Shown here piece after piece: positions 5,193 through 49,000 of a DNA stretch of 64,000 nt; position 1 is the stretch's first letter; every line of letters starts with the position of its first letter. Origin of the DNA: Mobula hypostoma (Eukaryota); the NCBI RefSeq assembly GCF_963921235.1, contig NC_086098.1, forward strand, positions 236,778,001-236,842,000, written 5' to 3'. The notes below the pieces were generated by a model. That model worked only from the letters and a program-made list of their open reading frames with translations. It was not told the origin of the DNA and made no database searches. A program made the position numbers and the translations under genes.

Positions 5193-6866
5193 ATGCTGTG
5201 GGGAGTGAACGAAAGAAGATGGCTGATCCTGACCCTGCTCCTGCTGGCTTTTGTGCGAGGCTGCCCAGCTGACTGCCCCACCTCCTGTACTTGTGGTCTG
5301 GGGAACGGGACAGTGGTGTGCCACGGTGCCCAGCTCACCACCCCTCCAAGACTGCTTCCTGACGGGATGACGAGGCTGGACTTGAGCAGCAACTTGATTG
5401 AGTGGCTGGGCCGGGGAACCTTTGGCAATCTGACCGAGCTACAGGAGCTGGACCTCAGCGACAACCTGGTGTCCAACATCGAGGATGAAGCATTCTGTGG
5501 CCTGCCCAGTCTCCTCACCCTCCGGCTGCGCGGTAACCGTCTAGACACCATTCAGCCCGGCGTGATGAGGGCCTTGCCCAACCTCCGCAGCCTGCAGCTG
5601 GGTGATAGGCTGTCCCATGTGGAGGCTGGAGTCTTCGCTGGCCTAGCACGACTACGGCATCTATCCCTGGGCATGGCGTCTGCCGCCCGCCAGGTGCCCA
5701 TTGCTTCCCTCTCATCACTGCGTGGCCTCCGGTCACTGCGCCTTTCCGGCTTGGGGGCCAGAACACTGGAGGCCGGCTCCTTCCATGGCTTGCGACACCT
5801 CCGCCACCTGCGCATTGACCGCTGGCCTCAGCTGGAGGAGCTGAATCCAGGCGCTCTGGACAGCCTCAACCTCACCAGCCTTTCGATCACCCGCTGCAAC
5901 CTGAGCTCAGTACCGGGCCACTCCTTCGCCCACCTGGTCTACCTGCGGTGTCTCGACCTCTCACACAACCCCATCACTGCGGTGCATGGGAGTGCACTGA
6001 AGGGCCTGGCTCGCTTGCGTGAGCTGCGGTTGGCTGGTGGCGGCCACCTGGCTGAGATCTGGGCTGGAGCCTTCCGGGGCCTGCCCAGCCTCCGAGCCCT
6101 CGATGTGTCGGGCAACAAATTGGTAACACTAGAGGAAGCGGCCTTTGAATCAGTGGGCAGCCTGGAGTCCCTGGGACTGGGCTCCAACCCACTGGCCTGC
6201 GACTGCCGGCTCCGCTGGCTGCTACAGGCTAAGGCGCCTGGGCTGGACTGGGGGCGGCGGCTGCCCACTTGCACCGACCCGGAGGGGGTACATGGCGTTC
6301 AGCTGGTGGAGCTAGGCGCTGCCGAGCTTACCTGCCGCCGGCCCCGTATCAACATCCGACCCCAGGCCCAGGTGTCGGTAGCTGAGGGGCAGACGGTGAG
6401 ACTGGCATGTGGGGCTGTGGGCTGGCCAGCTCCGTTGGTGAACTGGGTCGCGCCCGACCTCCGGTTGCTGAGTGGTGGCAAGGGTGGTCGGCTCCAGATG
6501 CTGGCTGATGGCTCGCTGGAGATCCGCCTGGCCCAGGCCGGGGACTCTGGTCTCTATCTGTGCACCGCGTTTAACCTAGCAGGTAACGACTCTGCCTCTG
6601 CTCACCTGCTTGTGAGCGGCTGGGGCACCCCCACCACCCCTGCCTCTGCTGGTCCTTCCCTGCTGGACCCTCCGACGTTGACAGTTGTCCTGACCCTGGG
6701 CTTGGCCTGCTTCCTTGGCGTCACCGTGTTCTGCTTCACACTTCTGCTGCTCTGGAGTCGGCTGAAGGGCCCCATCAAACGCACCGGCAGCGTGGAGGTG
6801 CTCAGGCACTCAAGCAGCATCAGCGCACAGTCCGAGGCCATCAAGTACACCACCAAAATGCTGTGA
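5193..6866 (+). CDS. LINGO-like: LINGO-family LRR and Ig domain transmembrane protein (557 aa, single coding exon)
   Basis: Signal peptide, LRRNT (CPADCPTSCTC), LRR array with LINGO hallmark segments (WPQL..., LNLTSLSITRCNLS, HLVYLRCLDLSHNPI, NPLACDCRL), Ig domain, TM helix (LGLACFLGVTVFCFTLLLLWSR) and short tail ending KYTTKML (LINGO1-3 end KFNMKMI/RFNMKMI). Splice acceptor tctgcag ends at 5183, so an upstream exon is implied. Paralog number not assignable by eye. Confidence 0.93.
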   Translation: MLWGVNERRWLILTLLLLAFVRGCPADCPTSCTCGLGNGTVVCHGAQLTTPPRLLPDGMTRLDLSSNLIEWLGRGTFGNLTELQELDLSDNLVSNIEDEAFCGLPSLLTLRLRGNRLDTIQPGVMRALPNLRSLQLGDRLSHVEAGVFAGLARLRHLSLGMASAARQVPIASLSSLRGLRSLRLSGLGARTLEAGSFHGLRHLRHLRIDRWPQLEELNPGALDSLNLTSLSITRCNLSSVPGHSFAHLVYLRCLDLSHNPITAVHGSALKGLARLRELRLAGGGHLAEIWAGAFRGLPSLRALDVSGNKLVTLEEAAFESVGSLESLGLGSNPLACDCRLRWLLQAKAPGLDWGRRLPTCTDPEGVHGVQLVELGAAELTCRRPRINIRPQAQVSVAEGQTVRLACGAVGWPAPLVNWVAPDLRLLSGGKGGRLQMLADGSLEIRLAQAGDSGLYLCTAFNLAGNDSASAHLLVSGWGTPTTPASAGPSLLDPPTLTVVLTLGLACFLGVTVFCFTLLLLWSRLKGPIKRTGSVEVLRHSSSISAQSEAIKYTTKML

Positions 6867-11882: not shown

Positions 11883-12998
11883 TTGCCAATTCCTCTTAAT
11901 CTCTGCATTTGGATCCTTGACTTCCTATCCGGAAGACCACAATCTGTGCGGATTTGTGATAACATATCCTCCTCACTGACAATCAATACTGGTGCACCTC
12001 AGGGGTGTGTGCTTAGCCCACTGCTCTACTCTGTATACACACATGACTGTGTGGCTAGGCATAGCTCAAAAACCATCTATAAATTTGCTGATGATACAAC
12101 CATTGTTGGTAGAATCTCAGGTGGTGACGAGGGGGCGTACAGGAGTGAAATATGCCAACTAGTGAAGTGGTGCTGCAGCAAAAACCTGGCACTCAGTGTC
12201 AGTAAGACGAAAGAGCTGATTGTGGACTTCAGGAAGGGTAAGACGAAGGAACACATACCAATCCTCACAGAGGGATCAGAAGTGGAGAGAGTGAGCAGTT
12301 TAAAGTTCTTGTGTGTCAAGATCTCTGAAGATCTAACCTGGTCCCAACATATCAATGTAGTTATAAAGAAGGCAAGACAGTGGCTATATTTCATTAGGAG
12401 TTTGAAGAGATTTGGCATGTCAACAAATACACTCAAAAACCTCTATAGTTGTACCATGGAGAGCATTCTGACAGGCTGCATCACTGTCTGGTATGGGGGG
12501 GGGGTTGCTACTGCACAGGACCGAAAGAAGCTGCAGAGGGCTGTAAATCTACTCAGCTCCATCTTGGGTACTAGCCAACAAAGTACCCAAGACATCTTCA
12601 GGGAGCGGTGTCTCAGAAAGGCAGCATCCATTATTATGACCTCCAGCACCCAGGGCATGCCCTTTTCTCACTGTTACCATCAGGTTGGAGATACAGAAGC
12701 CTGAAGGCACACACTCAGCGATTCAGGAACAGCTTCTTCCCCTCTGCCATCCGATTCCTAAATGGGCATTGAATCCTTGGACACAACCTCAGTTTTTTTA
12801 ATGTACAGTATTTCTGTTTTTTGTACTTTAAAAAAATCTATTCAATATACATATACTGTAATTAATTTACTTGTTTATTTATTATTATTATAATTTTCTC
12901 TCATCTAGATTATGTATTGCATTGAACTGCTGCTGCTAAGTTAACAAATTTCATGTCACATACTAGAGATAATAAACCTGATTCTGATTTTGATTCCA
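11883..12998 (+). mobile_element. Rex1/Babar-like (L2-group) LINE, 5'-truncated RT plus 3' tail
   Basis: [33 protein letters not shown]; ends AATAAA plus (ATTCTG)n. Confidence 0.88.
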
Positions 12999-15224: not shown

Positions 15225-16060
15225 CCATAAGACCATGAGATATAGGAACAGAAGTAGGCCATTTGGCCCATCATGTCTACTCCGCCATTTCATCATGGCT
15301 GATCCATTTTCCCTCTTAGCCCCTATTTACAGCCTTCTCCCTAAAACCTTCATACCCTGTCTAATCAAGAATCTATCAACCTCTGCCTTAAATATACATA
15401 AAGACTTGTCCTCCACCGCCACCTGTGGCAACGAATTTCACAAATTCACTACTCTCTGGCTAAAAAAATACCTCCTAATCTCCATTCTAAAAGGACATCC
15501 CTCTATTCTGAGGCTGTGTCCTGTGGTTTTAGACTCACCCACCTTAGGAAACATCCTCTCCACATCCACTCTATCAAGGCCTTTCGACATTCCATAGATT
15601 TTAATGAGGTCACTCTGCATTCTTCTGAATTCCAGTGGGTAGAGGACCAGAGCCATCAAATGCTCATCATACACCAAACTTTTCAATCCTGGAATAATTT
15701 TCGTGAACCTCCTTTGAGCCTTCTCCAATGTCAGCACATCCTTTCTTAGATAGGGGCTCCAGAACCACTCACAACAGTGAGGTCTCACCAGTGCTTTATA
15801 AAGCCTTAACATTACATCCTTGCTTTTATATTCAAGTCCTCTCAAAATGAATACTAACATTGCATTTGCCTTCCTCGCCATCGACTCAACCTGTAAATTA
15901 CACTTTAGGGAATCCTGCACGAGGATTCCCAAGTCCCTTTGCAGCACAGAATTTTGAATTTTCTCTCCATTTTATAAAATAGTCTATGTTTTTATTTTTT
16001 CTACCAAAGCGCATGACCATACACTTCCCACACATCTGCACTTCTTTGCCCATTCTCCTA
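15225..16060 (-). mobile_element. CR1 LINE 3' fragment
   Basis: QRDLG...LYKALVRPH...FFSQRVVNL. Confidence 0.85.
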
Positions 16061-20432: not shown

Positions 20433-22122
20433 TAGAAACATAGAAACTCTACAGCACAATACAGGCCCTTCAGCCCACAAAGTTTTGCTGAACATGTCCC
20501 TACCTTAGAAATTACTAGGGTTACCCATAGCCCGATACTTTTCTAAGCTCCATATACCTATCCAAAAGTATCTTAAAAGACCCTATTGTATCTGCCTCCA
20601 CCACTGTTGCCGGGAAACCATTCCACGCACTCACCACTCTCTTCATAAAAAACTTACCCCTGTCATCTCCTCTGTACCTGCTCCCAAGCACCTTAAACCT
20701 GCACCCTCTTGTGGCAGCCATTTCAGCCCTGGGAAAAAGCCTCTGACTATCCACACGATCAATGCCTCTCATCATCTTATACACCACTATCAGGTCACCT
20801 CTCATCCTCCGTCGCTCCAAGGAGAAAAGGCAGAATACACTCAACCTGTCTTCATAAGGCATGCTCCCCAATCCAGGCAACATCTTTGTAAGTCTCTTCT
20901 GCAGCCTTTCAATGATTTCCACATCCTTCCTGTAGTGAGGAAACCAGAACTGAGCACAGTACATGAAATAGGGTCTGACCAGGGTCCTATATAGCTGCAA
21001 CATTACCTCTCAGCTCCTAAATTCAATTCCACGATTGATGAAGGCCAATACATCGTATGCCTTCTTAACCGCAGAGTCAACCTGCGCAGCTGCTTTGAGC
21101 GTCCTCTGGACTCGGACCCCAAGATCCCTCTGATCCTCCACACTGCCAAGAGTCTTACCATTAATACTATATTCTGCCATCATATTTGACCTACCAAAAT
21201 GAACCACCTCACACTTAACTGGGTTGAACTCTATCTGCCACTTCTCAGCCCAGTTTTGCATCCTATCAATGTCCCGTTGTAACCTCTGACAGCCCTCCAC
21301 ACTACCCACAACACCCCCAACTTTTGTATCATCAGCAAACTTACTAGCCCATCCCTCCACTTCCTCACCCAGGTCATTTATGAAAATCAAGAAGAGTAAG
21401 GGTCCCAGAACAGATCCCTGAGGCACACCACTGGTCACCAACTCCATGCAGAGTATGACCGGTCTACAACCACTCTTTACCTTCTGTAGGCAAGTCAGTT
21501 CTGGATCCACAAAGCAATGTCTCCTTGGATCCCATGCCTCCTTACTTTCTGAAGAAGCCTTGCACGGGGTACCTTATCAAATGCCTTGCTGAAATCCATA
21601 TACACTACATCTACTGCTCTTCCTTCATCAATGTGTTTAGGCACACCCTCAGAAAGTTCAATCAGGCACCACCTGCCCTTGACAAAGCCATGCTGACTAT
21701 TCCTAATCATATTATACCTCTCCAAATGTTCATAAATCCTGCCTCTCAGGATCTTCTCCATCAACTTACCAACCACTGAAGTAAGACTATAATTTCCTGG
21801 GCTATCTCTACTCCCTTTCTTGAATAAGAGAACAACATCCGCATCCTTCCAATCCTCTGGAACCTCTCCCATCCCCATTGATGATGCAAAGATCATCGCC
21901 AGAGGCTCAGCAATCTCCTCCCTCACCTCCCACAGTAGCCTGGGGTACACCTCATCCGGTCCCGGTGACTTATCCAGCTTGTTGCTTTTCAAAAGCTCCA
22001 GCATATCCTCTTTTTTAATATCTACATGCTCATGCTTTTCAGTCCACTGCAAGTCATCACTACAATCACCAAGATCCTTTTCCATAGTGAATACTGAAGT
22101 AAAGTATTCATTAAGTACCTCT
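20433..22122 (-). mobile_element. Relatively young CR1 LINE (RT domain to 3' end)
   Basis: [44 protein letters not shown]; same subfamily as 30181-33270. Confidence 0.93.
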
Positions 22123-25020: not shown

Positions 25021-28000
25021 AGCTTTTTAAATTCCTAGCCTTGTCTATATTTTTCTCACTTTTATACCCCTCCCCACCTTTTCCTTGGGATCTCGTTCTG
25101 CCGTCAGCTGCATTGCACCAAATGCGCACCCCGTTGCGGAACAACCATGAACCCTGCCGCCCGCATTTCCTTTCCAGTCCTGTTTATTCCCCTCCATAGA
25201 TGCTACCTGACCTGCTGAGTTCCTCCAGCATTTTGGTGTAGGTTGTTTTGAAAAATCTGGGATCTTCCTGTGTAATCTCTCCTGCGCTCTCTGTGTGTGA
25301 CAGAGAGGGAGACCCGTTCCTGTGTGTGTGTGAGAGAGACAGACTGCGATCCGTGAGTGTGTGTATGGGGAACGGGTCAGTTTCAATCCAGGGGGTGCAA
25401 AATTCACTGCTTTCATTGCCTGTCCTCTCTCCCTCCCCCAGATCAGCCCCGGGTGAAGTTTGAATCACCGGCTAGGTCCTCGGTGGGATATCACGATGAG
25501 AAGTCGGACACTCTATACCTTGGATCCACGGGAAGCGTGTACCTCCTGCAGTTCACCGACGCTGATGTCTCCCAGACTCCGGTACTTAGTGCCGCCCCGC
25601 CGCTTGGTAGTCGCCGTCTGGCAACTGTCTAGGGATTTGGTTGGCGCAGGCAAGATCGGGTTTTGTAGTGGAGCCGTGAGAGAACCGATCAGGCTAAAGG
25701 TCTCTTGTAAGAGTGGGATCCTCTCGCTGTGCGTTCCCATCTTCCCGAGACAGCAGGAGTTTTTAACTGGAAAATGAGAAGGGGAAGAGGGAGTAGAAGA
25801 GGGAACCATTAAAGGGGAGAGGGGGAGGAGTTGAGAGAAAGTTGTGGCAGGAAGGAAAAGTGGGAAGGATGCAAATAGAAAGGGCCAGATAGGTGAGAAT
25901 GGAGGAGATGGCAGAGGCTGAGGAGAGGAGGATGAAGAAAAAGGAAAACGGTATACAAAATTATGAGGGGCGTAGAGAGGATGAATGCTTGCAGGCTTTC
26001 CCTCCTCAGGTTGGGTGAGACGAGAAGTAGAGGTCATAGGTTAAGGGTGAAAAGTGAAATATTTAGGGGGAACCTCTTCACTCAGGGACTGTGAGTATGG
26101 TGGATCCAGGTTCATTTTCAATATTTAAGAGAAGTTTGCATGCATGGGAGGGCTATGAAAGGCTATGGTCCAGGTACAGGTAGATGGGAATAGGCAGAAG
26201 GCCAAACCAACATGGCCTAGATGGCCTGAAGGCCATGTTTCTTTTCTGTGCTATAATTCTATAATAACTGAATTATTTCAAGTGAATGTTGTTCTGTCAG
26301 ATCCCCCTGTCGCTGGATGACAACACCAGAAAGAAGTGCCAGAGCAAAGTGTCAGCAAGTCAGGTAAGGACAAGCTGTGGTATCAGCACGTACCAGCTGG
26401 AACTAGACTTGAGTATCTGCAGATGGTTCCATTCTGTCAAAATGTGTCGAGAGTTAATGCCGTATGTTACCGTCTCAGGTCTCTCCTCTGTACCCAACAC
26501 TGAACACAGCTGATAACCAGTTACTGATGAGATCACCATGGCATAGCTACTGTTGACATTGATTGATTTGTACATGTACATTTGTACAGCCTACAATGTT
26601 GTGCCAACCCTTTAATCTACTCCAAGATCCCTGCCACATAGCCCTCCACTTTTCTTTCATCCATATGCCTATCTAAGAATCTCTTAAATACCCCAAATGT
26701 ATCTGCCTCACCCCGGCATTGCTTTCCACGCACCCACCACTGTGTAAAAAAAAACTTGCCTTTGGCATCCCCTATACTTTCATCCAAACATTTTAAGATT
26801 ATAAGACCATAAAATATAGGAGCAAATATATGGTCCACCCCGGGAAAAAGCCTCTGGCTACCCACCCAATCTATGCCTCCCATCATCTTGTACACCCTTT
26901 ATCAAGTCACCTCTCATCCCCCTTCATTCCAAAGAGAAAAGCCCTAACTTGCTCAAGCTACCCTTGTAATACATGCTCTCTAATCTGGGCAGCATCCTGG
27001 TAAATCTCATATGCATCATCTCCATATCCTTCCTATAATGAGGCAACCAGAACTGAGCACAGTACTTCAAGTATGATCCAACCAGGGTTTTATAGAGCGG
27101 CAACATTACCTCATAGCTCCTGAACTCAATCCCCTGACTAATGAAGACCAAAACAACATATGACTTCTTAACCACCCAATCTACTTGCATGGCACTGTGG
27201 ACCCCAAGATCCCTCTGTTCCTCCACACTGCTAAGATTCCCACCATTAACATTGTATCTGCCTTCAAGTTAGACTACCAAAGTATATCATTTGGATTCAA
27301 TGGCCCTAGCCTGTCCCAAAGAAACCATCACAGACTGGCTTTGCTGTGCGGACTTGTGTGTGAAGTCAGCCTGATACAGGGGACATGATGATGATGTTCA
27401 AATATACCCACGTAGAATCCACAGCACGCAAACACAACATTATACTGGCAAATGGGACAGGCTCATGGACTGGAAACAGCTTAGAGCTGAGTAGACCAAA
27501 TGCAGGCAAATAGGACTAGGTCAGGTATGCAACTTGGTTAACATGGACAGGTTGGGCCAAAGGGCTTGTTTCCCAGCTGTAAAACTCTGTAACTGTAAAT
27601 TAAGCACCCCAGCCACATCTCACTGCCCCAACTGAGACTTCCTCCACTATTTCATCCACACCAGAGCCACAAAAGGGAATCTGTGTCAAAACTGTGGGAG
27701 ACCTTAAACCAGAGGTGAAGGACCATAAGACATAGGAGCAGAATTAAGCTATTTGGCCCATTGAGTTTGCTCTGCCACTCAATCATGGCTGATTTATTAT
27801 CCCTCTCAACCCCATTCTCCTGCATTCTCTCTATAACTTTTGATACCCTTACTAATCAAGAACATATTAACCTCCACTTAAAATATACCCAATGACTTGG
27901 CCTCCACATCTGTGGCAATGGAAATCCACAAATTCACTACCCTCTGGCTAATGAAGTTCCTCATCTCTGTTCTAAATGGATATCCCTCTATTCTGAAGCT

Positions 28001-31000
28001 GTGCCCCTCTAGTGCAGGACTCCCCCCATTATAGAAAACGTCCTCTCCATATCCACTATCTAGGCCTTTCAATATTTGATAGGTTTCAATGAGGTCCCCC
28101 TACCCGTCATTTTTCAAAACTCCACTGAGCATAGGCCCTGAGCCATCAAGTGTTCCTCCATACATTAACCTTTTCATTCCCATAATAATTCTCATAGATC
28201 TCCTCTGGACCCTCTCCAATTACTGCACATCATTTCTTAGATTAGGGGCCCAAAACTCCTTACATTACTCCAAGTGTAGTCTGACCAATAGCTTATAAAG
28301 CTTCAGCATTACATCCTTGCTCTTGTATTCTAGTCCTCTTGAAGTGAATGCTAAGATTGCATTTGCACTCCTTAAAACTGGCTCAACCCCCAAGTTAACC
28401 TTTAGGGAATCCTGCATGAAGACTTCCAAGTCTCTTTGCAATTCTAAGTTTTGAATTTTCTCCCCATTTAGAAAATAATCTACACCTTTATTCCTTCTAC
28501 CGAAATGTATCACCATACAATTCCCTACACTATTTTCCATCTTCCACTTCTTTGCCCATTCCCCCAATACATCTGCCATTCTGCAGACTCCCTGCATCCT
28601 CAACACTACCTACCCCTCCACCTGTGTTTGTATCGTCTGCATACTTGGTCGCCAAGCCAAGTAGGTGTAGGAGAGAGTTACCCGACTCACTGACGGCAGA
28701 GATGCTGCTTACAACTCTTCATTACAGAACAAGGGACAGAAATTAACAAGTAAAAATGTTACAGCATGCCATCCGAGTAACATGTTTGTCCTTTACTTGT
28801 CTTGTACTATGAAGATCACAGGCAAGGCCATCTGCAGTTGCCTTTGAACCACGTAGCTTGCTGCTTCATCAAAACTATACTGTTCTATGTTCTAAAAGAC
28901 AATTCCAGGCCTAGTAAGCCACTGTGGATCTAGAGTCATGCAGTATAGGGACTGATGGCAGATCTCATCAAGCAGCACAGAACAGGCCTTTCAGCCCATG
29001 TTGTCTTGTCAAGCACACCAAATTAAGTTAATTTCTTCTGCTTACACATGGTCCATATCCCTCTGTTCACGAGCCAATCTGAAAGCCCTTTGAACGCTGA
29101 AGTCAAAGTCGAATTTACTGTCGCATGCAAAAGTCCATGTATGCATAGGTGCAATGCAATGCAGCTGCACCATTCTCACGTCTGCCACCACCACCAACCC
29201 TAGCAGCACACTCCAGACACCCACCTGTGTAAAGAAAACATGCCCGGCACATTCTTTTTACTTTCACCCCTCTCACCTTAAAGCTGTGCCCTCCAGTATT
29301 CAAAACTTAGAACAGTACAGCATAGTACAGGCCCTTCCCTCCCGCATAGCTGACCATTTTTTTTCATCCACGTGCCTATCTAAGATTCTTCTTAACGTCC
29401 CTAATGTAACTGCCTGTACCTCTACCCTGGCTGCTTGTACCACATACTCACCATTCTGTCTTTAAAAAAAAACTACCTCTGATAGCTCCCACCGCCCTTC
29501 CCTCCAATCACCTTAAAATTATGCTCCCTTGTATTAGCCATAATAATACAAGGGGACATAATTTTTCTGCTCAACCTTTTCTCATAAGACATGCTCTCTA
29601 ATCCATGCAGCAAAAACTCCTCTGCACCCTCTCTAAAGCTTCCACATTCTTCTCATTAAAAACTACTGAAGGGGTCTCCCTCTCCCCCTATTTGTGACAT
29701 TTACTGGGAGTTTGTCTATGAAGGGCTGAAGCATTGTTGATGATCCCTACCATCCATCCCACAGTCTTTGACCCACTACGATCTGAAAGGCGTTACAGGA
29801 GCATCAGGACTTGGACTGCCAGAAATGGTGCTGGTTTCTCCCCTCAGGCAGTGAGACTAATGAACACCCTGCCACCACGAAGGTTTCGTACCTTGGACAG
29901 CAAGTTGTTTACTGTACTGTTTACCTGTGCTGCGCACTTTGAATATATTTTATTAACTAACTTTTGGTAATTTACTACAACTAGAGGTCATTGGTTAGTG
30001 TGAAAGGTGAAATGTTTAATTGGAACATGAGAGGAAAATTCCTCACTCAGAGGGTGGTGAAAGTGTGGAGTAAGCTGCCAGTGGAAGTGTGGATTTGATT
30101 TTGATTTCCACATTTCAGAGAAGTTTGGATAGGTACATAGATGGTAGGGGAATGGAGAGCTATGGTTCAAGTACGGTTGGGACCTCTTCAGGGGCAGGTG
30201 TGACCTGTACAAAAAGGACAGGTTGTACTTGAATCCAAGGGGGACCAATATCCTGGTCGGAAGGTTTGCAAAAGTTATTGGGGAGGGTTTAAACTAGAAT
30301 TGCTGGGGGGTGGGAACCGAACTGAAGTGACAGAGGAAAGGGAGGTTGGCTCACAAAAATGAAAGTTTGGAAACAGTGCGAAAGGGAGGATAGGCAGGTG
30401 ATAGAGAAGGGACATGCTCAGTCCAATGGTTTGAGATGTGTCTATTTTAATGCAAGGAATATCATGAATAAAGCAGATGAGCTTAGAGCGTGGATCAGCA
30501 CTTGGATCTAAGATGTGGCCATTACAGAGACTTGGATGGTGCAGAGGCAGGAATGGCTACTTCAAGTGCCAGGCTTTAGATGTTTCAGAAAGGATAGTGA
30601 GGGAGGCAAAAGAGGTGGGGGCGTGGCACTGTTGATCAGAGATAGTGCCTAGGCTGCATAAAACGAGGAAGTCATGGAGGGGTTGTCTACAGAGTCTCTA
30701 TGGGTGGAAGTTAGGAATACGAAGGAGTCAATAACTCTACTGGGTGTTTTTTATAGACCACCCAATAGTAACAGGGACACTGAAGAGCAGATAGGGAGAC
30801 AGATTCTGGAAAGGAGTAATAATAACAGGGTTGTTGTGGTGGGAGATTTTAATTTCCCAAATATTGATTGGCATCTCACTGGAGTGAGGGGTTTAGATGG
30901 GGTGGAGTTTGTTAGGTGTGTTCAGGATGGCTTCTTGACACAATATGTAGATAAGCCTACAAGAGGAGAGGCTGCACTTGATCTGGTATTGGGAAATGAA

Positions 31001-34000
31001 CCTGGTCAGGTGTCAGGTCTCTCAGTGGGAAAGCATTTTGGAGATAGTGGTCACAATTCTATCTCCTTTATCATAGCATTGGAGACAGATAGGAACAGAC
31101 AAGTTAGGGAAACGTTTAATTGGAGTAAGGGGAACTATGAGGCTATCAGGCAGGAACTTGGAAGCATAAATTGTAAACAGATGTTCTCAGGGAAACGTAC
31201 AGAAGATATGTGGCAAATCTTCAGGGAATATTTGCGTGGGGTTCTGAGTAGGTACGTTCCAATGTGACATGGAAAGGATGGTAGGGTACAAGATCCGTAG
31301 TGCACAAAGGCTGTTGTAAGTCTAGTCAAGAAGAAAAGAAGAGCTTACAAAATGTTCAAAAAGCGAGGTAATGATATGAATCTAGAAGATTATAAGGCTA
31401 GCAGGAAAGAGCTTGAGAATGAAATTAGAAGAGCCAGAAGGGGCCATGAGGCAGCCTTGGCGGACAGGATTAAGGAAAACCCCAAGGCATTCTACAAGTA
31501 TGTGAAGAGCAAAAGGATAAAACATGAGAGAATAGGTTCAATCAAGTGTGACAATGGAAAAGTGTGTATGGAACAGGAGGAAATAGTGGAGGTACTTCAT
31601 AAATACTTTGCTTCAGTATTCATTATGGGAAAAGGATCTTGGCAATTGTTGGGATGACTTACAGTGGACCAAAAAGCTTGAGAATGTAGATATTAAGAAA
31701 GAAGATGTGCTAGAGCTTTTGGAAAGCATCAAGTTGGAAAAGTCACCAGGACCAGATGGGATGTACCCCAGGCTACTGTGGAAGCGAGGGAGGAGATTGC
31801 TGAGCCTCTGGCAATGATCTTTGCAACATCAATGAGGACGGAAGAGGTTTCAGAGGATTGGAGGGTTACGGATGTTGTTCCCTTATTCAAGAAAGGGAGT
31901 AGGGATAGCTCAAGAAATTATAGGCCAGTGAGACTTACTGCAGTGGTTGGTAAGTTGATGGAGAAGATCCTGAGAGGAAGGATTTATGAACATTTAGAGA
32001 GGCACAATATGATCAGGAATAGTCAGCATGGCTTTGTCAAAGGCAGGTCGTGCCTTACGACCCTGATTGAATTTTTTGAAAATGTGACTATGCACATTGA
32101 TGAAGGTAGAGCCGTAGATGTAATGTAGATGGATTTCAGCAAGGCATTTGATAAGGTACCCCATGCAAGGCTTATTGAGAAAGTAAGGAGGCATGGGATC
32201 CAGGAGGACTTTGCTTTGTGGATCCAAAACTGGCTTACCCACAGAAGGCAAAGAGTGGTTGTAGACGGATCATATTCTGCATGGAGGCCGGTGACCAGTG
32301 GTGTGCCTCAGGGATCTGTTCTGGAACCTGTACTCTTTGTGATTGTTATAAGTGACCTGGATGAGGAAGTGGAGGGATGGGTTAGTAAATTTGCTGATGA
32401 CACAAAGGTTGGAGGTGTTGTGGATAGTGTGGAGGGCTATCAGAGGTCACAACAGGACATTGATAGGATGCAAAACTGGGCTGAGAAGTGGCTGATGGAG
32501 TTCAACCCAGATAAGTGTGAGGTGGTTCATTTTGGTAGGTCAAATATGATGGCAGAATATAGTATTAATGGTAAGACTCTTGGCAGTGTGGAGGATCAGA
32601 GAGATCTTGGGGTCCGAGTCCATAGGACACTCAAAGCTGCTATGCAGGTTGATTCTGTGGTTAAGAAGGCATATGGTGCGTTGGCCTTCATTAATCGTGG
32701 GATTGAGTTTAAGAGCCAAGAGGTAATGTTGCAGCTGTATAGGACCCTGGTCCACTTGGAGTACTGTGCTTAGTTCTGGTCGTCTCTTCATAGGAAGTAC
32801 GTGGAAACCATAGAAAGGCTGCAGAGGAGATTTGCAAGGATGTTGCTTGGATTGGGGAGCATGCCTTATGAGAATAGGTTGAGTGAACTTGGCCTTTTCT
32901 CCTTGGAGCAACGGAGGATGAGAGGTGACTTGATTGAGGTGTACAAGATAATGAGAGGCATTGGTCGTGTGGATAGTCAGAGGCTAACATGAGAGGGCAT
33001 AGTTTTAAGGTGCTTGGAAGTAAATACAGAGCAGATGTCAGGGGTAAGTTTTTTTACGCAGAGAGTGGTGAGTGTGTGGAACGGGCTGCCAGCGGCGGTG
33101 GTGAAGATGGAAATGATAGGGTCTCTTAAGAGACTCCTGGATGGTTACATGGAGCTCAGTAAAATAGGGGGCTATTTTAGAGCCTAGGTAGTTCTAAGGT
33201 AGGGACATGTTCGGCACAGATTTGTGGACCAAAGGGCCTGTATTGTGCTGTATGGTATCTGTGTTTCTATGTCAATGAGACTAGGCAGTTTAAATGGTTT
33301 AGCACAGACTAGTTGGGTCGGAGGACCTGTTTCTGTGTTGTAAAGTTCTATTACTCTATATTTTGTTTTATATGCTTTCTGTGATATATGTTTTGTGGGT
33401 GTACCATTGTCCAGAGCACTGTTGTTTCATTTGGTTTTATATGTGTACAGTCAAATGACAATAAATTTTATCTTATAATGAACTGAACATTTCTACCCTC
33501 GGAAAAACATTCTAGCTGAATACATTTATCCATACCCCTCATAATTTCATAAACTTTTGTCCCCTCAGACACTGTTGCTGTAAAGAAATCTAACCAAATT
33601 TGTCCAACCTGTCCTGAATGCCCCTCAATCCAGGCAACAATGTTGTACATCTCTTCTGAACCCTCTTCAAATTCTATACATCATTCATATAATGGGGTGA
33701 CCAGAAATGCATGCAGTACCCCAAATCAACCAATTCAAAGTTTTATACAACTACAACATGATTTCTTGCCTCTTCTGCTCAATGTTCCTAGAGAAGAAGG
33801 CACAGGGCATACTTCAACTTTCCTTTACTGAAGGGAATTAGTGAACCAAAGATCTTGGTTTAAAAGCAATCTAGTTCACTGTTTTTTCCACTGGTATATT
33901 GCAGATTTGTTTCATGAACTGATTTGTCCAGCTGCTGTGCTGGGATTCAAACCTGGATGATCAATCATCTAGTTACAGAAGCATTATGCAAGTGTAAATG

Positions 34001-43000: not shown

Positions 43001-46000
43001 GACATTCTACTCTCTGCAGGAACTCCACTGGTATCTGTGCCTATTCCCAGTCGGACATAGAGCAGGCATTCCGAAACCCAAAACTGAAGGGCTTCACCGG
43101 CAACCTACCTGGGGGCCAGAGGCCAGGAACGGTATGAACAGTTTTAGGAATGAGTTCAGTGTGTTCTTGCCCATTTGTTGCTTGGACCAAAATTTATTTT
43201 GTGGAGGACAGAAGTAGGGAAGTGTAGGAGGAAAGGTTTAGAGGACAAACATGGGCAAATGGACAAGCTTAGATGGGAATTTTGGTCGGCAGGGGCCACA
43301 GAACACAGTAAAGCACAGCATAGCATAGGCCTTTCGGCCCACAAGTCTCTGAAACGCTAATGTATCTGCCTCTATCACCACCCCGGCAGTGTATTCTATG
43401 CACTCACCACTCTGTGCAAAGGAAACCTACTTCTGATATTGCACATTACCATACATTCTTTCAATCATCTTAAAAGGATACCCTCTCATATTAATCATTG
43501 CTGCCATGTGAAATAGGCACTGGTTATCCACTCTATTTATGCCTCTTATCATCTTTTACACCTTTATCAAGTCACCTCTCATCTTCCTTCATTCCAAAGA
43601 GAAAAGCCATAGTTCAATGTTCTCAAGACATGCTCTCTGTTGTGTATGTGGCCTGGTTACACAACAATGCTATTAATAAGAACGCTGGAGACGGGAGCTA
43701 CGGTTCATGGTTCTTTACTGGCAGAAACTGAACTTGGCACATATGTACAGATCAATACATGCCTAATAGCACATGCTCAATATATGCCTAATAGTGCATT
43801 CAACAATGTGTTATTAAAACATAAAGTAGTCCCTTATTATACTGCAGGCCATACGGTACACTCCTCCCCTTTTATTTTAATACTGTATCAACTTTTTTTT
43901 ACTGGGGCACTATGGTAAACAAATATGTTTACCCTTAAGTGCCATTTGTTTACTTAGTAACTTAATAATACCAAATTATAACAAAGTAACGTAATAATAT
44001 TAAATTATAACAAGCCTTTTAAAAAAAAAATCTTTTGGTCTAAGACCCATTTATAACTCAAGTCTCTTGCGGGGGGGGGGGGGTCCTTCTCTGCCTCTCC
44101 GGGTAACGTCTGTCAATAAACTTGTTTGTTTTAATTCGGATTTCCATATAAAAGTCATGAAAAGTTGATCTCTGAGCATAGGGAGTTAAGAAGATGTGCG
44201 CCTCCAACTTGCTGAAAGTTCTAGGCAGCAGATCACCTTCATATAATGAAGACTCCTCTGTGCAGCTGTCCTAGATATATCCGCATCTTTGCGCTATCAC
44301 TTGTCTTCTTTACCCATATCTCATTTGTTCCAACACAGCCAATCTTCGTATTGTCCTTAGATTCCAAATAGATAGCCTGACCTTTATGATACCATTTCCA
44401 TAATATAACTTTCCATCTTCTATTTGTGCTTCATGTTTTTGTGCTGGTGATTCAGCAGGAGTGCTGGGAAGATGCTCAGGAGAAGATGGAGATGCTGGTC
44501 TTTTTGGAGATTTAAACTTATTGAGAGTTCGCAGATCTTCCATCATCTGTTCCTCTGTTAGCAAGTACAAAGTTTGTAACTTAACTGCACAGGTGCAGGT
44601 TGTCCTCTTTTGTCTGTAATTGGAACAGGGTCATTCGGTCTCCTCCTTAGTTTCCTAGTCATTATTGGCTTTACCTCCATAGAATCTCCTGTGAGTTCCA
44701 TTGTTAGCCTCTCATTCTCAATCATCTTTTTTTCTTCCAACTCAATCTTTTTAATCTTCAGATTCCTTCACTGCTGCTTTCTTCTCTTTAATATAATTCC
44801 TTTTCACTTGTTCTGTCTCCAGTTGCAGAAAAAGCTCTGCATTTCGTATTCTTTCCTTGTATTGTTGATCTAGTTTCTTCATCCTTTTCTGATACTCCTG
44901 CAAAGTGCCTTCCTGTAACTGCTGTAGCTGTCTTTTGAGAGATATCAATTTCTCCTGGTACATCTGCTCTTTTACTTCCAGGTAGTCTTCATCATCCCGC
45001 TTATTGGCAATATCTGTCTCCCTTGCATCCTCTGTATCTTCATCCGAGTCATGGCCACGGATACTGCATTCGTCCTCATTGTCGACGCTGTCCAGCTTCT
45101 CATTGTTGTAATAGTCGACAATGGGTAAGAGGAGAGCTGCGGACATCTTCCTTGCCGAGCTGCCCTCCTTTGTTGACACATTTAGTGCCTTGATGGTGTG
45201 CCAATCCAACTGGATTTTCCTGAGCCATTCACGTCCCAGCAAAGGTGGTTCTCCATTTTTCAGTACATAGTGGTTCAGCTGCTGTGTTTTGGCTCCGTAG
45301 GTCACTGTCTCTTTAATTTTACCTTTGGGATGCGCTTTCTGTCCTGTGTAAGTCTTTAGCAGGAGTTTAGTTCGTTTCAGAGGTATGTGAGAAAACAGTC
45401 GTTTGTAGTCGTGTACAGAGATCACTGTTAAAGCTGAGCCTGTGTCCAACTCTATTTTCAGTCTTACGCCTGCCACTTGTGGAGTGATATCCTTATTACT
45501 CTTTGATCATGTCTCTTTCACACTGTGAAGTTGCAGACAAGACAATTCACTTTCATCTGAGTCATTTTCATCAGAACTGCTTTCTTTCATGTTGTGTACA
45601 TTATTGTGTTTTCCTTTCTGGGATTTCTTGTTTCTCTGTATTTTGTCCTTTTGCTGCTGTTTACTAGCTTTGCATATTCTGCCAATGTGGCCCTGTTTGC
45701 CACAGTTTCTGCATTCTGTGTCTTTAAACCAAGAGTCATCTGAGTCATGTGACCTATTCCCACAACGGTAACATTTCTTTCCTTCATTTCTGTTCAGTGA
45801 CATTTTATTTGTGGCATATTCCAGAGATTTTTGTTGTATCTCGGAAGCACCCTGTGCCGCTGTTCCCGTTGATATTGCAATGTTTAGCGCTTTCTCAAAT
45901 GTAAGGTCTCTTTCACACAGAAACTTGCCACACACTAACTTATTTCCTGGCATAATTTACATAGTCATAGTATAGTCATAGTCATACTTTATTGGTCTCG

Positions 46001-49000
46001 GGGGAAATTGGTTTTCGTTACAGTTGCACCATAAATAATAAATAGTAATAGAACCATAAATAGTTAAATAGTAATATGTAAATTATGCCAGTAAATTATG
46101 AAATAAGTCCAGGACCAGTCTATTAGCTCAGAATGTCTGACCCTCCAAGGGAGGAGTTGTAAAGTTTGATGGCCACAGGCAGGAATGACTTCCTATGACG
46201 CTCTGTGCTGCATCTCGGTGGAATGAGTCTCTGGCTGAACGTACTCCTGTGCCCACCCACCCAGTACATTATGTAGTGGATGGGAGACATTGACCAAGAT
46301 GGCATGCAACTTAGACAGCATCCTCTTTTCAGACACCACTGTGAGAGAGTCCAGTTCCGTCCCCACATATTACTATTTAATTATTTATGGTTTTATTTCT
46401 ATTTAATTATTTATGGTGCAACTGTAACAAAAACCAATTTCCCCTGGGATCAATAAAGTATGACTATGACTATTGTGAAATTTAAACCTTTCAGCAATGA
46501 CCAGTGGTTTGGGGTTTAAATGCTGTTGGACAGTGTCTACTATTTGCTTGAATGCTTTGTCAGCTGGCTTTTCAGGGGTCAACAAGCTCCGTAGCAGGCC
46601 GTATGTTTTTGCTCCCATAATACTGAGGAAGACGCTGGCTTTCTTTTCGTCCTTAACACTGTTAGCCTCACAATATAACTCCACTCTTTCAATGTAAGTT
46701 GCCCAGTCTTCAATGCCACTATCAAATGCTGTAATGGTTCCAATCATCGCCATCTTTGTTATGTTAATTAAGCCCCGTTTTCCCCTTATTTTCCTTTTTG
46801 ACTCGCGTGTCCTTTTTGCTAGCGCCACGAGCGCACTCTGTCTAGATGTGTGTGTGTGTGTCGCTCCTTTTTATCTCCTTGCTGGGGCAGGCAGACCCTC
46901 AGCCCCTGGGGGGTGAGGGGGGGGGTCAGCACTGGCTGTGGTCTTGGCTGGACGAGCTGCGGCTCCGACTGTGTCTCTTGGTTTCCCGGCATTCCCGACC
47001 CCGGCTGTGCTCCCGCTTCCTTTCAGACTCGTGGCCTCGCTCTGCCTCCTTCTCCCACTCCTTGGCTCGTTCCTTGCGCTCTTCTTCCGAGTGTCATTAT
47101 CAATTAAAACACGGCATTCCAATACGACGCAAGTTCATTAACCTCATTGCCAATTTGTTGTGTATGTGGCCTGGTTACACAACAAAACTATTAATAAAAA
47201 CGCTGGAGACGGGAGCTAAGGTTCATGGTTCTTTACTGGCAGAAACCGAACTCGGCACACACGTACAGATCAATATACGCCTAATAGCACATGCTCAGTA
47301 TGTGCCTAATAACGCATTCAATAACGTGTTACTAAAACATAAAGTAGTCCCTTATTATACTGTAGGCTATACGGTACACTCTCTAATCCAGGCAAGCATC
47401 CTGGTAAAATTCCTTTGCAACCTATCTACAGCTTCCACATCCTTCCCATAATGAGGCAACCAGAAGTGAACACAATATTCTGAGTATATTCTAACTAGGG
47501 TTTTATAGTGCTGCAACATTATCATGTGGCTAGAACACAATCCCCGACTAATGAAGGCCAACATACTATATGCATTCTTAACCACCCCAACAACTTGAAT
47601 GAACCAGTTGGGCTGTAGGGCCTGTACCCTTGCAGTATGATGCAATGATTTGAAGTCTTGAGCAGTTGGGTAAAGTATTGGTGATGCATTCTAGGCTGTG
47701 TGCAGTCTTGAGTACCTTGCTAAAGGAGGATAAACTGGCTTTCAGAGTGGTGCAGAGGACTGCTTACTGCAAAGAGGAAGGTTTGAATCAGTTGGCTCAA
47801 TATTTACTGGTGTTTAGGACAAGGGCTGATCAGTGAGAGGTTGCTTGATGGCGATGTACGATGAACAAGTTTCTCCGGACTGGAAAGATCCAGAGAAACA
47901 ATTTCTTTTTCAGGACACTAAAGGAAATGGAATTCTTCCCCCTCCCCTTCTTCCTCTTTCAGGTCGTCATCTCCCCTCCTGGAGATGAGGAGGAATTGCT
48001 TTTCCCAGAGAGGAGTGAATCTCTAGAATTCTCTGGCCATTACATTACATTACATTTGAGGCTACCTCATTAAATATATTTAAGATAGATAGACTTTTGC
48101 ATAGCAGGGGTTATGGGAGAAGACGACAGGTAGGTGGAGCTGAGTCCACGGACAGATCAGCTGTGATCTACTGAATGGCGGAGCAGACTTGATGGGCCTT
48201 ACCTTAGAATTCAGTGTTTTAATTCCACTTGGGTAAGAAGAAATTGGAACATAAGAATTTGGATGATATTTGGGGTCAAGGCCACAGCTCAGAATGGTGA
48301 GACTTTACTGGATGGCCAGGCAGGCTTGAATGGCTGAATGGACTACAAGCCCACCTCTTTAGTTTCCAAATCCTTTGATTGAGATGCATCAGTGGGGCGT
48401 TCATGGTGGCTAGGTGTCTGGTCAAAAATGAGAACTGGACACACTGGAAAAAAATGACTAAATGGCTTCATTTCCACAGTGCATCAAGGTGACCCCACCC
48501 AAAGTCATTCAAGCCATCAGAAGCTTCCCAGAAATTGAGGCGCCTATCTACCCATTTTTGAATCACCCACTCTACGTTATGAAGCACAACAACTACACTA
48601 GGATTACAGCGGACAGAGTGAAGGGGGCCAACCAGGACGTCTATCATGTCCTATTCCTTGGTACAGGTACGATACATTCACCAGACTAGCACATGTCTCA
48701 GTTTGGTGGGCTGTGACGGGTGGGAAATTCCAGGAATTGAGGCCCAGCTCCAGGCTATTTACAGACTACATCAAACATAATTGTACTATTTCCAGGACTG
48801 GTGAGGCATGGAACAAGGTGTGAAGACAAGTTGCGATAGGGAGGTAGGGAAGCTCCAAGGGGAAGCTAAATGATCAGGCAAACCGTTCAATAAGGAACAA
48901 TGCAATGTCATCCATTGGTAGAGAAAGACCATAAGACATCAGAGCAGAATTAGGCCATTTGGCCTATCAGATCTGGCTGTTTTATTATCCCTTTCAATCC

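What the first reader, a model, noticed from the sequence alone, without database searches (positions are those of the whole stretch)
43638..47378. LTR retrotransposon that captured a spliced SUDS3 mRNA in place of its RT/RNaseH/integrase
Seen in sequence, minus strand: 5'LTR, PBS-like motif, gag, zinc knuckles, protease, then intronless SUDS3 CDS and ~100 nt of putative 3' UTR, then the last codons of pol ([10 protein letters not shown]...KRLEL*), PPT and 3'LTR, all bounded by a 5-bp TSD. The catalytic pol core is absent exactly where SUDS3 sits. Known: SUDS3 is a multi-exon Sin3-HDAC corepressor subunit, and host mRNA capture by double template switching is described for LTR elements and retroviruses. 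Inference: this is a chimeric, non-autonomous retroelement carrying a chromatin-silencing gene, which would need an autonomous partner to move. I know of no description of this family, but cannot check the literature.
Basis: partly seen in the sequence, partly recalled or inferred. Interest (0 to 1): 0.92.

Follow-up and report, generated by a model that had tools for sequence, protein, structure and literature searches.

The report
Ray LTR retrotransposon carrying SUDS3 cDNA
A dead copy of a gypsy-type LTR retrotransposon in a ray genome has an intronless copy of the host chromatin-repressor gene SUDS3 where its replication enzymes should be; this is a known kind of gene capture, and it probably explains why stingrays and manta rays carry many SUDS3 retrocopies.

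Summary
On the minus strand, 47378-43638 is a 3741-bp LTR element. It has two 223-nt LTRs (91.5% identical, TG..CA) and a 5-bp GAGAG target duplication inside a split LINE copy. It also has a PBS-like motif, gag, a zinc knuckle, a protease and a polypurine tract.

Four non-chimeric relatives from metagenome and Logan contigs continue from protease into RT/RNase H. The window loses similarity to three of them at 45170-45160 and reads the SUDS3 start codon at 45147. The SUDS3 part is 303 colinear codons in 923 nt, 90.8% identical to Mobula birostris SDS3, and in frame with the protease. About 21 codons of the pol C-terminus follow. RT, RNase H and integrase are absent. No poly(A) or duplication flanks the cargo.

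The same gag / protease-end / SUDS3 junction occurs in a Hemitrygon akajei gene model. Seven intron-poor "SDS3-like" models in Mobula and Hypanus share an 8-residue gap with the window copy. That gap is absent from 108 other SDS3 proteins.

[quoted passage not shown] The window copy is decayed, and cargo substitutions look neutral. Both the 3' junction and the claimed 3' UTR remain unplaced.

The parts
47379..47383 (-). Target-site duplication, upstream copy (GAGAG)
   Evidence: Read. The flank is a LINE RT C-terminal region that continues on the other side of the element.
47156..47378 (-). 5' LTR, 223 nt, TG..CA
   Evidence: the repeat finder, blastn, LTR alignment: 91.5% identity to the 3' LTR. 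The LTR end is conserved in L003.
47135..47152 (-). PBS-like motif starting with TGG, 4 nt after the 5' LTR
   Evidence: It is conserved between the window and the non-chimeric relative L003. The primer tRNA was not identified; there is no tRNA gene in the window.
46754..47134 (-). Leader. It is about twice as long as in relative L003 and holds an unexplained 55-codon charged open frame.
45171..46753 (-). gag-protease coding region, treated as one broken part. The gag start codon is at 46753-46751. The zinc-knuckle Pfam match is at about 45713-45669 and the aspartic protease Pfam match at about 45470-45219. Breaks: 1 foreign insertion and 1 in-frame stop, no frameshift.
   Evidence: Pfam. Frameshift-aware alignment to the L003 ORFs: 103 codons at 76% identity and 258 codons at 77% identity. 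Nucleotide similarity to L001, L003, L004 and L005.
45160..45170 (-). 5' junction zone, where similarity to non-chimeric relatives stops
   Evidence: blastn end points and DNA alignment A2. The same junction peptide is present in P0146 of H. akajei.
45148..45159 (-). Short remnant of the SUDS3 5' UTR, read in frame with the protease
   Evidence: The 241-aa ORF 45476-44751 runs from the protease through this stretch into SUDS3.
44221..45147 (-). Intronless SUDS3/SDS3 coding sequence, start codon to stop codon, treated as one broken part: 3 frameshifts and 2 in-frame stops. It lacks the 8 codons that mark the ray 'SDS3-like' family.
   Evidence: Pfam Sds3 scores 28.3 bits against a cutoff of 25.4. 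PDB 4zqa SDS3 matches at E 1.7e-23.
44115..44220 (-). Unassigned 106 nt between the SUDS3 stop codon and the pol tail. It is a putative proximal 3' UTR ending in an A-rich stretch with an ATTAAA hexamer. The 3' junction lies somewhere in or at the end of it.
   Evidence: No similarity to the 3' UTR of a fish SDS3 mRNA contig, so the origin is not verified.
44051..44114 (-). Last ~21 codons of pol plus the stop codon, with 1 frameshift
   Evidence: Translations. Likeness to the C-terminal ends of P0152, P0199 and P0230, which are RT-RNaseH-integrase polyproteins.
43861..43873 (-). Polypurine tract abutting the 3' LTR
43638..43860 (-). 3' LTR, 223 nt, TG..CA
43633..43637 (-). Target-site duplication, downstream copy (GAGAG)

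Best explanation
This is a non-autonomous derivative of a Ty3/gypsy-type LTR retrotransposon of a batoid ray. Its RT, RNase H and integrase coding region is replaced by a nearly full-length, spliced SUDS3 (SDS3) cDNA.

Most likely origin (inferred). Inside a virus-like particle of the parent element, reverse transcription began on element RNA and copied the LTR, PPT and last pol codons. It then switched to a co-packaged SUDS3 mRNA near that mRNA's 3' end and copied it almost to its 5' end. Finally it switched back to element RNA at the protease/RT boundary and finished. The chimeric cDNA kept both LTRs, the PBS and the PPT, so the parent's integrase could insert it, giving the 5-bp duplication.

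Spread (shown in part). Because it kept those cis signals, it could be copied again by autonomous relatives. It became a small family in stingrays and manta rays.

State of this copy (shown). It inserted into a LINE, roughly 20-45 million years ago if the neutral rate is 1-2.5e-9 per site per year (my assumption). It has since decayed.

Cargo. SUDS3 lies in frame with gag-protease, so a Gag-PR-SDS3 fusion was encodable. There is no evidence that it had a function; a passenger is the default reading.
For: Anatomy of a complete integrated LTR element:
- LTRs, TG..CA ends, a 5-bp duplication inside one split LINE copy, a PBS-like motif and a PPT.

Replacement rather than insertion:
- Relatives L001, L003 and L004 run from protease into RT/RNase H. 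The window leaves them at 45170-45160.
- On the far side only the last ~21 pol codons remain, matching the C-terminal ends of full RT-RH-IN polyproteins.

Cargo is a processed mRNA copy:
- 303 colinear codons in 923 nt, 90.8% identical to M. birostris SDS3.
- A single blastn alignment to an SDS3 mRNA contig.

No LINE hallmarks around the cargo.

Secondary spread:
- P0146 (XP_072884955.1, Hemitrygon akajei) has the same gag N-terminus (81% identity), the same protease end, the same junction and 5' UTR remnant, and the SDS3 N-terminus.
- Seven 'SDS3-like' models in M. hypostoma, M. birostris and Hypanus sabinus, on contigs of different length, lack the same 8 residues. These residues are present in 108 of 119 SDS3 proteins examined and absent only from those seven. 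The window lacks them too.
- The window shares 3 of 5 further family-diagnostic residues.
- The Hypanus model P0017 spans exactly 191 codons plus a stop codon, so it is a single exon.

Mechanism and precedent: Tan et al. 2016 (PMC5131818).
Against: - The template switches are inferred from the product, not observed.
- Microsimilarity at the junctions could not be tested, because neither the host SUDS3 UTRs nor the 3' end of a parent element could be fetched.
- The 106 nt after the SUDS3 stop codon are unassigned, so the 3' junction is only bounded (44220-44114).
- Only one other copy (P0146) is shown to have the element-cargo junction. They could therefore be LINE-made copies of a copy.
- No other chimeric ORF turned up in two junction-centred protein searches.
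- No autonomous element sharing this LTR was found. The nearest relatives are 82-91% identical internally, and the L003 LTR is only locally similar.
Confidence: 0.75

Rival explanations
1. Read-through or DNA-level transduction, as in the capture of cellular genes by retroviruses. A parent element lay upstream of SUDS3 or of a SUDS3 retrocopy. A deletion or a read-through transcript joined protease to the gene, and one later recombination during reverse transcription restored the 3' end of the element.
For: The end product (5' LTR, gag, PR, host cDNA, 3' end, LTR) would look the same as what is seen. The cargo lies in sense orientation and in frame with the protease.
Against: The 5' junction lies a few nucleotides into a short 5' UTR remnant just before the start codon. 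That fits copying to the end of an mRNA better than it fits a splice or a genomic deletion, but the exon structure of ray SUDS3 could not be read. The window has no trace of the host gene's neighbourhood.
Confidence: 0.12
2. An ordinary LINE-made SUDS3 processed pseudogene landed inside an existing LTR element, and a deletion removed RT, RNase H and integrase.
For: LINEs are abundant in the window. A 2026 preprint ascribes vertebrate retrocopies mainly to non-LTR elements and lists SUDS3 among the top retrocopy parents in cartilaginous fishes. The cargo ends in an A-rich stretch.
Against: There is no poly(A): the longest A run in the last 40 nt is 4. There is no flanking duplication beyond chance. 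The element is not continuous across the cargo: about 2.7 kb of pol would have to be lost exactly at both cargo ends. The same junction recurs in H. akajei.
Confidence: 0.05
3. The chimera is real but a side branch. The many ray 'SDS3-like' copies were made by LINEs from one expressed retrocopy that carried the 8-codon gap. The LTR element picked up that transcript, or the gapped transcript is a natural splice form.
For: Element flanks are shown for only two copies, the window and P0146. The N-terminal extensions of P0007 and P0008 do not look like protease. The protein searches found no further chimeric ORFs.
Against: None of 108 SDS3 proteins from other vertebrates shows the 8-residue gap as an isoform. 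The window copy and the paralogs share the gap plus 3 of 5 diagnostic residues. Gene predictors do not normally annotate gag or protease, so missing protease in gene models says little.
Confidence: 0.2
4. Assembly artefact joining an element and a SUDS3 retrocopy.
For: None specific. The region is repeat-rich.
Against: There are no N runs in the window. The reading frame is continuous across the junction. Matching LTRs and a duplication bound the whole unit. An independent assembly of another species has the same junction.
Confidence: 0.01

Closest known systems
LTR-mediated retrocopies of metazoans (Tan et al. 2016, Genome Res 26:1663, PMC5131818), e.g. Drosophila CG17604_r
   Same: A host cDNA replaces an internal part of an LTR retrotransposon rather than interrupting a continuous one. 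There is no poly(A) or duplication around the cDNA. Both LTRs are kept. The locus behaves as a non-autonomous LTR element with further insertion sites that share the same switch points and the same diagnostic differences from the parent gene. In-frame proteins are possible.
   Different: Those retrocopies are mostly partial, at a median 26% of the transcript. Here nearly the whole coding sequence is carried. The host is a cartilaginous fish, which that study did not sample. Copies are seen in at least three ray genera. Microsimilarity at the switch points, a hallmark in that study, could not be tested here.
Maize Bs1 (as summarised in PMC5131818)
   Same: An LTR element whose interior holds host exon sequence. 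It has one to five copies across related species, all sharing the same switch points.
   Different: Bs1 combines pieces of three genes. This element carries one near-complete cDNA, unless the unexplained leader ORF proves to be a second piece. One is in a plant, the other in a vertebrate.
Cell-derived genes in replication-defective retroviruses (my own knowledge; not tested here)
   Same: Spliced host coding sequence replaces pol. It is often fused in frame to gag, and a competent helper is needed for spread.
   Different: This is a gypsy-type retrotransposon with no env. The cargo is a corepressor subunit with no sign of selection. The spread is germ-line and old.
LINE-made processed pseudogenes
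   Same: An intronless copy of an mRNA.
   Different: No poly(A) tail and no target duplication of its own. It is bounded by element sequence and by LTRs.

Membership tests
LTR retrotransposon, Ty3/gypsy type | Two direct LTRs ending TG..CA, flanked by a short target-site duplication | tested here: met
   223-nt LTRs, 91.5% identical, with a GAGAG duplication. The flanks are adjoining parts of one LINE copy.
LTR retrotransposon, Ty3/gypsy type | Primer binding site next to the 5' LTR, complementary to a tRNA 3' end | tested here: inconclusive
   A TGG-led motif lies 4 nt after the LTR and is conserved in L003. No tRNA was available for comparison.
LTR retrotransposon, Ty3/gypsy type | Polypurine tract next to the 3' LTR | tested here: met
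   A 13-nt purine run abuts the LTR.
LTR retrotransposon, Ty3/gypsy type | gag with a CCHC knuckle and an aspartic protease, followed by RT, RNase H and integrase in that order | tested here: not met
   The knuckle and protease are present. RT, RNase H and integrase are absent from the window element. Relatives have them in gypsy order (L001; P0152, P0199 and P0230). The element is therefore a non-autonomous derivative, not an autonomous member.
LTR-mediated retrocopy (Tan et al. 2016) | An intronless host cDNA replaces internal element sequence. The element is not continuous across it. | tested here: met
LTR-mediated retrocopy (Tan et al. 2016) | No poly(A) tail or duplication around the cDNA | tested here: met
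LTR-mediated retrocopy (Tan et al. 2016) | Microsimilarity between the mRNA and the element at the switch points | not testable with these tools
   This needs the ray SUDS3 UTRs and a parent element's 3' end. The NCBI ray genomes could not be read, and the fish mRNA UTRs are not alignable.
LTR-mediated retrocopy (Tan et al. 2016) | Secondary retroposition: further copies with the same switch points | tested here: met
   One further copy has the same 5' junction (P0146). Seven more copies share cargo markers, but their flanks are unread.
SUDS3 / SDS3 (Sin3-HDAC corepressor subunit) derived sequence | Sds3 domain and near-full-length colinear similarity to vertebrate SDS3, as opposed to BRMS1-type relatives | tested here: met
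   Pfam Sds3 scores above its cutoff. All top hits are named SDS3, with rays best at 91%. 303 of 327 residues of M. birostris SDS3 align at 90.8% identity. PDB 4zqa SDS3 matches.
Functional SDS3 paralogue | Open reading frame, and substitutions that avoid conserved positions | tested here: not met
   The window copy has 3 frameshifts and 2 stops. In the window copy, differences fall on 10.3% of invariant columns and 11.6% of variable columns. In six of the seven annotated paralogues the two rates also do not differ. Only the short model P0004 shows a weak depletion at invariant columns (1/119 against 3/39, p = 0.047).
LINE-made processed pseudogene | 3' poly(A) tail and its own target-site duplication | tested here: not met

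The most novel reading that the evidence does not exclude
The founding element expressed SDS3, alone or as a Gag-PR-SDS3 fusion. This altered Sin3-HDAC based repression in germ cells to the element's own benefit, which is why this particular chimera, unlike most, multiplied across stingrays and mantas. It would be a vertebrate retrotransposon carrying a host-derived chromatin factor that it uses.
Probability: 0.06. Interest if true: 0.85.

Novelty: new member of a known kind. Interest (0 to 1): 0.45.

Why it matters
It is a clean, fully bounded vertebrate example of gene capture by an LTR retrotransposon: almost the whole coding sequence, in frame with gag-protease, with evidence of later spread in at least three ray genera.

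It also offers a concrete explanation for a recent survey result. That survey lists SUDS3 among the five genes with most retrocopies in cartilaginous fishes and attributes retrocopies in general to non-LTR elements. If most of those copies carry this LTR, gag and protease, they were spread as cargo of a mobile element and not by repeated LINE retroposition of a highly expressed gene. That would matter for how retrocopy counts are interpreted.

It also flags annotation errors. Ray gene models named "SDS3-like" and "Y-box-binding protein 1-like" include decayed element sequence.

Tried and rejected
1. Fetching DNA around the Mobula, Hypanus and Hemitrygon copies. One protein was not on record.
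2. Two junction-centred protein searches for other chimeric ORFs. They found only protease relatives and P0004.
3. A scan of JGI metagenome contigs and of IMG/VR with a 19-nt LTR word conserved in both LTRs. It gave two hits with no other similarity, so chance matches, and none in IMG/VR.
4. A scan of IMG/VR with the fusion protein. Nothing was found.
5. Species identification through the intact LRR-Ig gene at 5193-6866. The exact protein is not in the collection, so the species stays unknown. It is a batoid ray, judged by the SDS3 family markers.
6. Checking the putative 3' UTR against a fish SDS3 mRNA contig. Only the coding part aligns.
7. Plain tblastn for counting breaks. It ran through frameshifts and overcounted stops, so I replaced it with a frameshift-aware alignment that returns counts only.
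8. Pfam and PDB searches of the charged ORF in the leader. No match.
9. Looking for Y-box (CSD) exons in the window, to test orthology with the H. akajei locus. None were found. That gene model spans 77 kb, so orthology is unlikely but not excluded.

Full report

- None was entered into a tool or used as evidence.
- While reading the raw sequence, I also located some of the breaks in my reasoning.
- I stopped doing this, deleted nothing, and give only counts of breaks below.

**What is there**

Read on the minus strand, window 47378-43638 is a 3741-bp LTR element.
- The two LTRs (47378-47156 and 43860-43638) are each 223 nt and align without gaps. They differ by 17 transitions and 2 transversions (91.5% identity, K2P 0.093). 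Both start TG and end CA.
- GAGAG flanks the element on both sides.
- The two flanks, compared separately with other LINE copies in the window, map to adjoining stretches of the same copies. The element therefore split a single LINE copy, as a clean integration would.
- A TGG-led motif follows the 5' LTR after 4 nt and is conserved in a relative. A 13-nt purine run abuts the 3' LTR.
- The element occurs once in the window, and the window has no N runs.

**Coding content**

- Pfam finds a CCHC knuckle in ORF 45953-45507. In the single 241-aa ORF 45476-44751 it finds an aspartic protease (residues 3-86) followed by an Sds3 domain (residues 163-237).
- The gag N-terminus aligns to that of relative L003 over 103 codons (76% identity) with no break. 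The knuckle-protease part aligns over 258 codons (77% identity) with one stop.
- gag is also interrupted by one foreign insertion of about 0.5 kb with 109-nt inverted arms.

**The 5' junction**

- Four non-chimeric relatives were recovered from short public contigs. L001 is a Tara Oceans metagenome scaffold, L003 and L004 are ENA metagenome contigs, and L005 is a Logan contig of run ERR6050777.
- L001 encodes knuckle, protease, RT and RNase H. L003 holds LTR end, PBS, gag, protease and the start of RT. L005 is 85-91% identical to the window and continues into RT/RNase H.
- L001, L003 and L004 match the window at about 82% identity from 45920 to 45170 and no further.
- In the DNA alignment, similarity fades within 45170-45160. 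After that the relatives read RT, while the window reads a dozen or so nucleotides and then the SUDS3 start codon at 45147.

**The cargo**

- The best protein hits are SDS3 of rays (Mobula hypostoma, M. birostris, Pristis pectinata; 91% identity).
- A frameshift-aware alignment places 303 codons of the 327-aa M. birostris SDS3 colinearly in 923 nt (45146-44224) at 90.8% identity, with 3 frameshifts and 2 in-frame stops.
- A fish SDS3 mRNA contig aligns to 45126-44217 as one piece.
- There is no room for introns.
- PDB entry 4zqa, named SDS3, matches at E 1.7e-23.

**The 3' side**

- After the SUDS3 stop codon (44223-44221) come 106 nt that I could not assign. They end in an A-rich stretch containing ATTAAA. 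They show no similarity to a fish SDS3 3' UTR. They happen to be open in the frame of the following pol tail.
- From 44114 to 44051 the sequence reads the last ~21 codons of pol, with one frameshift.
- This tail resembles the extreme C-terminus of P0152, and the C-terminal ends of P0199 and P0230. All three are RT-RNaseH-integrase polyproteins by Pfam, found through their protease similarity to the window.
- The 3' junction is therefore bounded to 44220-44114 but not placed.
- RT, RNase H and integrase are absent. They cover about 900 codons in those relatives.

**Against a LINE-made retrocopy**

- The cargo has no poly(A): the longest A run in its last 40 nt is 4.
- The sequences outside its two ends share at most a 6-mer, which 1045 of 2000 shuffles also reach.
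- pol is not continuous across the cargo.

**Not a one-off**

- The exhaustive representative search returned P0146, whose match spans the junction. It is XP_072884955.1 of Hemitrygon akajei, annotated "Y-box-binding protein 1-like".
- Its first ~150 residues are the same gag N-terminus (81% identity), the same protease end, the same junction with the 5' UTR remnant read in the same frame, and the SDS3 N-terminus. Identity is 74% across the junction.
- No Y-box exons occur in the window, so the two are probably different insertions.
- NCBI annotates "SDS3-like" proteins on contigs of different length: four in M. hypostoma, two in M. birostris and two in Hypanus sabinus.
- The seven that cover the region all lack the same 8 residues. 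Of 119 SDS3 proteins examined, 108 have these residues and only those seven lack them.
- The window copy lacks them too. Nine residues of the true gene's segment stay unmatched, against one for a paralogue's segment.
- Of 5 further columns that separate paralogues from true ray SDS3, the window shares the paralogue state at 3.
- Each paralogue is about as close to the true gene as to any other paralogue. That is the star shape expected for copies thrown off by one source.
- The Hypanus model P0017 spans exactly 191 codons plus a stop codon. The Mobula models span 1.9 and 3.0 kb.
- I could not read the flanks of these copies. Their carriage by the LTR element is therefore inferred from shared cargo markers, not shown.

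**No sign of function**

- In the window copy, differences from true ray SDS3 fall on 10.3% of columns that are invariant across 112 SDS3 proteins, and on 11.6% of the variable columns.
- Six of the seven annotated paralogues behave the same way. Only the short model P0004 shows a weak depletion at invariant columns (p = 0.047).
- After insertion the copies drift. Whether the active source lineage was constrained cannot be told from proteins alone.

**Mechanism and precedent**

- Tan et al. 2016 (PMC5131818) describe exactly this architecture in fly, mosquito, zebrafish, chicken and mammals. Internal element sequence is replaced by host cDNA, there is no poly(A) or duplication around it, both LTRs are kept, and microsimilarity is found at the switch points.
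- In their data, some chimeras have several insertion sites that share switch points and diagnostic substitutions. They read this as non-autonomous LTR elements undergoing secondary retroposition. They cite maize Bs1 as a parallel.
- The ray element fits that model on every feature I could test. Microsimilarity could not be tested.
- A 2026 preprint lists SUDS3 among the five top retrocopy parents in cartilaginous fishes, without linking it to an LTR element. Its held supplements do not mention SUDS3.
- I found no paper that describes this family.

**Age and host**

- K2P 0.093 between the LTRs gives about 19-46 million years at 2.5e-9 to 1e-9 substitutions per site per year. The rates are my assumption.
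- The host is a batoid ray. The species was not identified.

**Verdict**

The kind is known, so this is a new member: a new cargo, a new host group, unusually complete, and multi-copy. The claim that it carries a chromatin-silencing gene is true as a description, but nothing shows that it matters to the element.

Noticed in passing
window 47134-46754 (minus strand), ORF 47093-46925: The element's leader is 371 nt, against 187 nt in relative L003, and is barely alignable to it. It holds a 55-codon, very charged Arg/Ser/Glu-rich open frame ending in a stop. There is no Pfam or PDB match. It could be chance in a purine-rich leader or a second captured fragment.
   Followed up: partly
inside gag of the element (window 46753-45507, minus strand): A foreign insertion of about 0.5 kb with 109-nt inverted terminal arms (93% identical). 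Its interior has a short frame resembling the C-terminal tail motif common in fish LINE or SINE families. There is no other copy in the window.
   Followed up: partly
window 5193-6866 (+): An intact single-exon ORF of 557 aa with a signal-peptide-like start, LRRNT, LRR repeats, one I-set Ig domain and a C-terminal hydrophobic stretch (Pfam). It is probably a real host gene of the LRR-Ig type. The exact protein is not in the public collection.
   Followed up: partly
window 11883-12704, 15438-15947, 20521-22085, 26844-27191, 30674-33000, 47379-47778 / 43238-43637: Many decayed LINE copies (endonuclease and RT fragments, shared RT C-terminal region) fill the window. The LTR element sits inside one of them.
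   Followed up: partly
P0146 = XP_072884955.1 (Hemitrygon akajei); P0004-P0010, P0017, P0124: Public gene models in ray genomes include decayed retroelement sequence. A 'Y-box-binding protein 1-like' model starts with gag, protease and SDS3 pieces of this element family, and several 'SDS3-like' models are drifting retrocopies.
   Followed up: yes
L001 (Tara Oceans metagenome scaffold), L003/L004 (ENA metagenome contigs): Marine and other metagenome assemblies contain contigs of this vertebrate gypsy-type family (82% identical to the window), presumably from fish or ray DNA in the samples. One cluster member from JGI/IMG carries a bacterial transporter name that does not fit.
   Followed up: no
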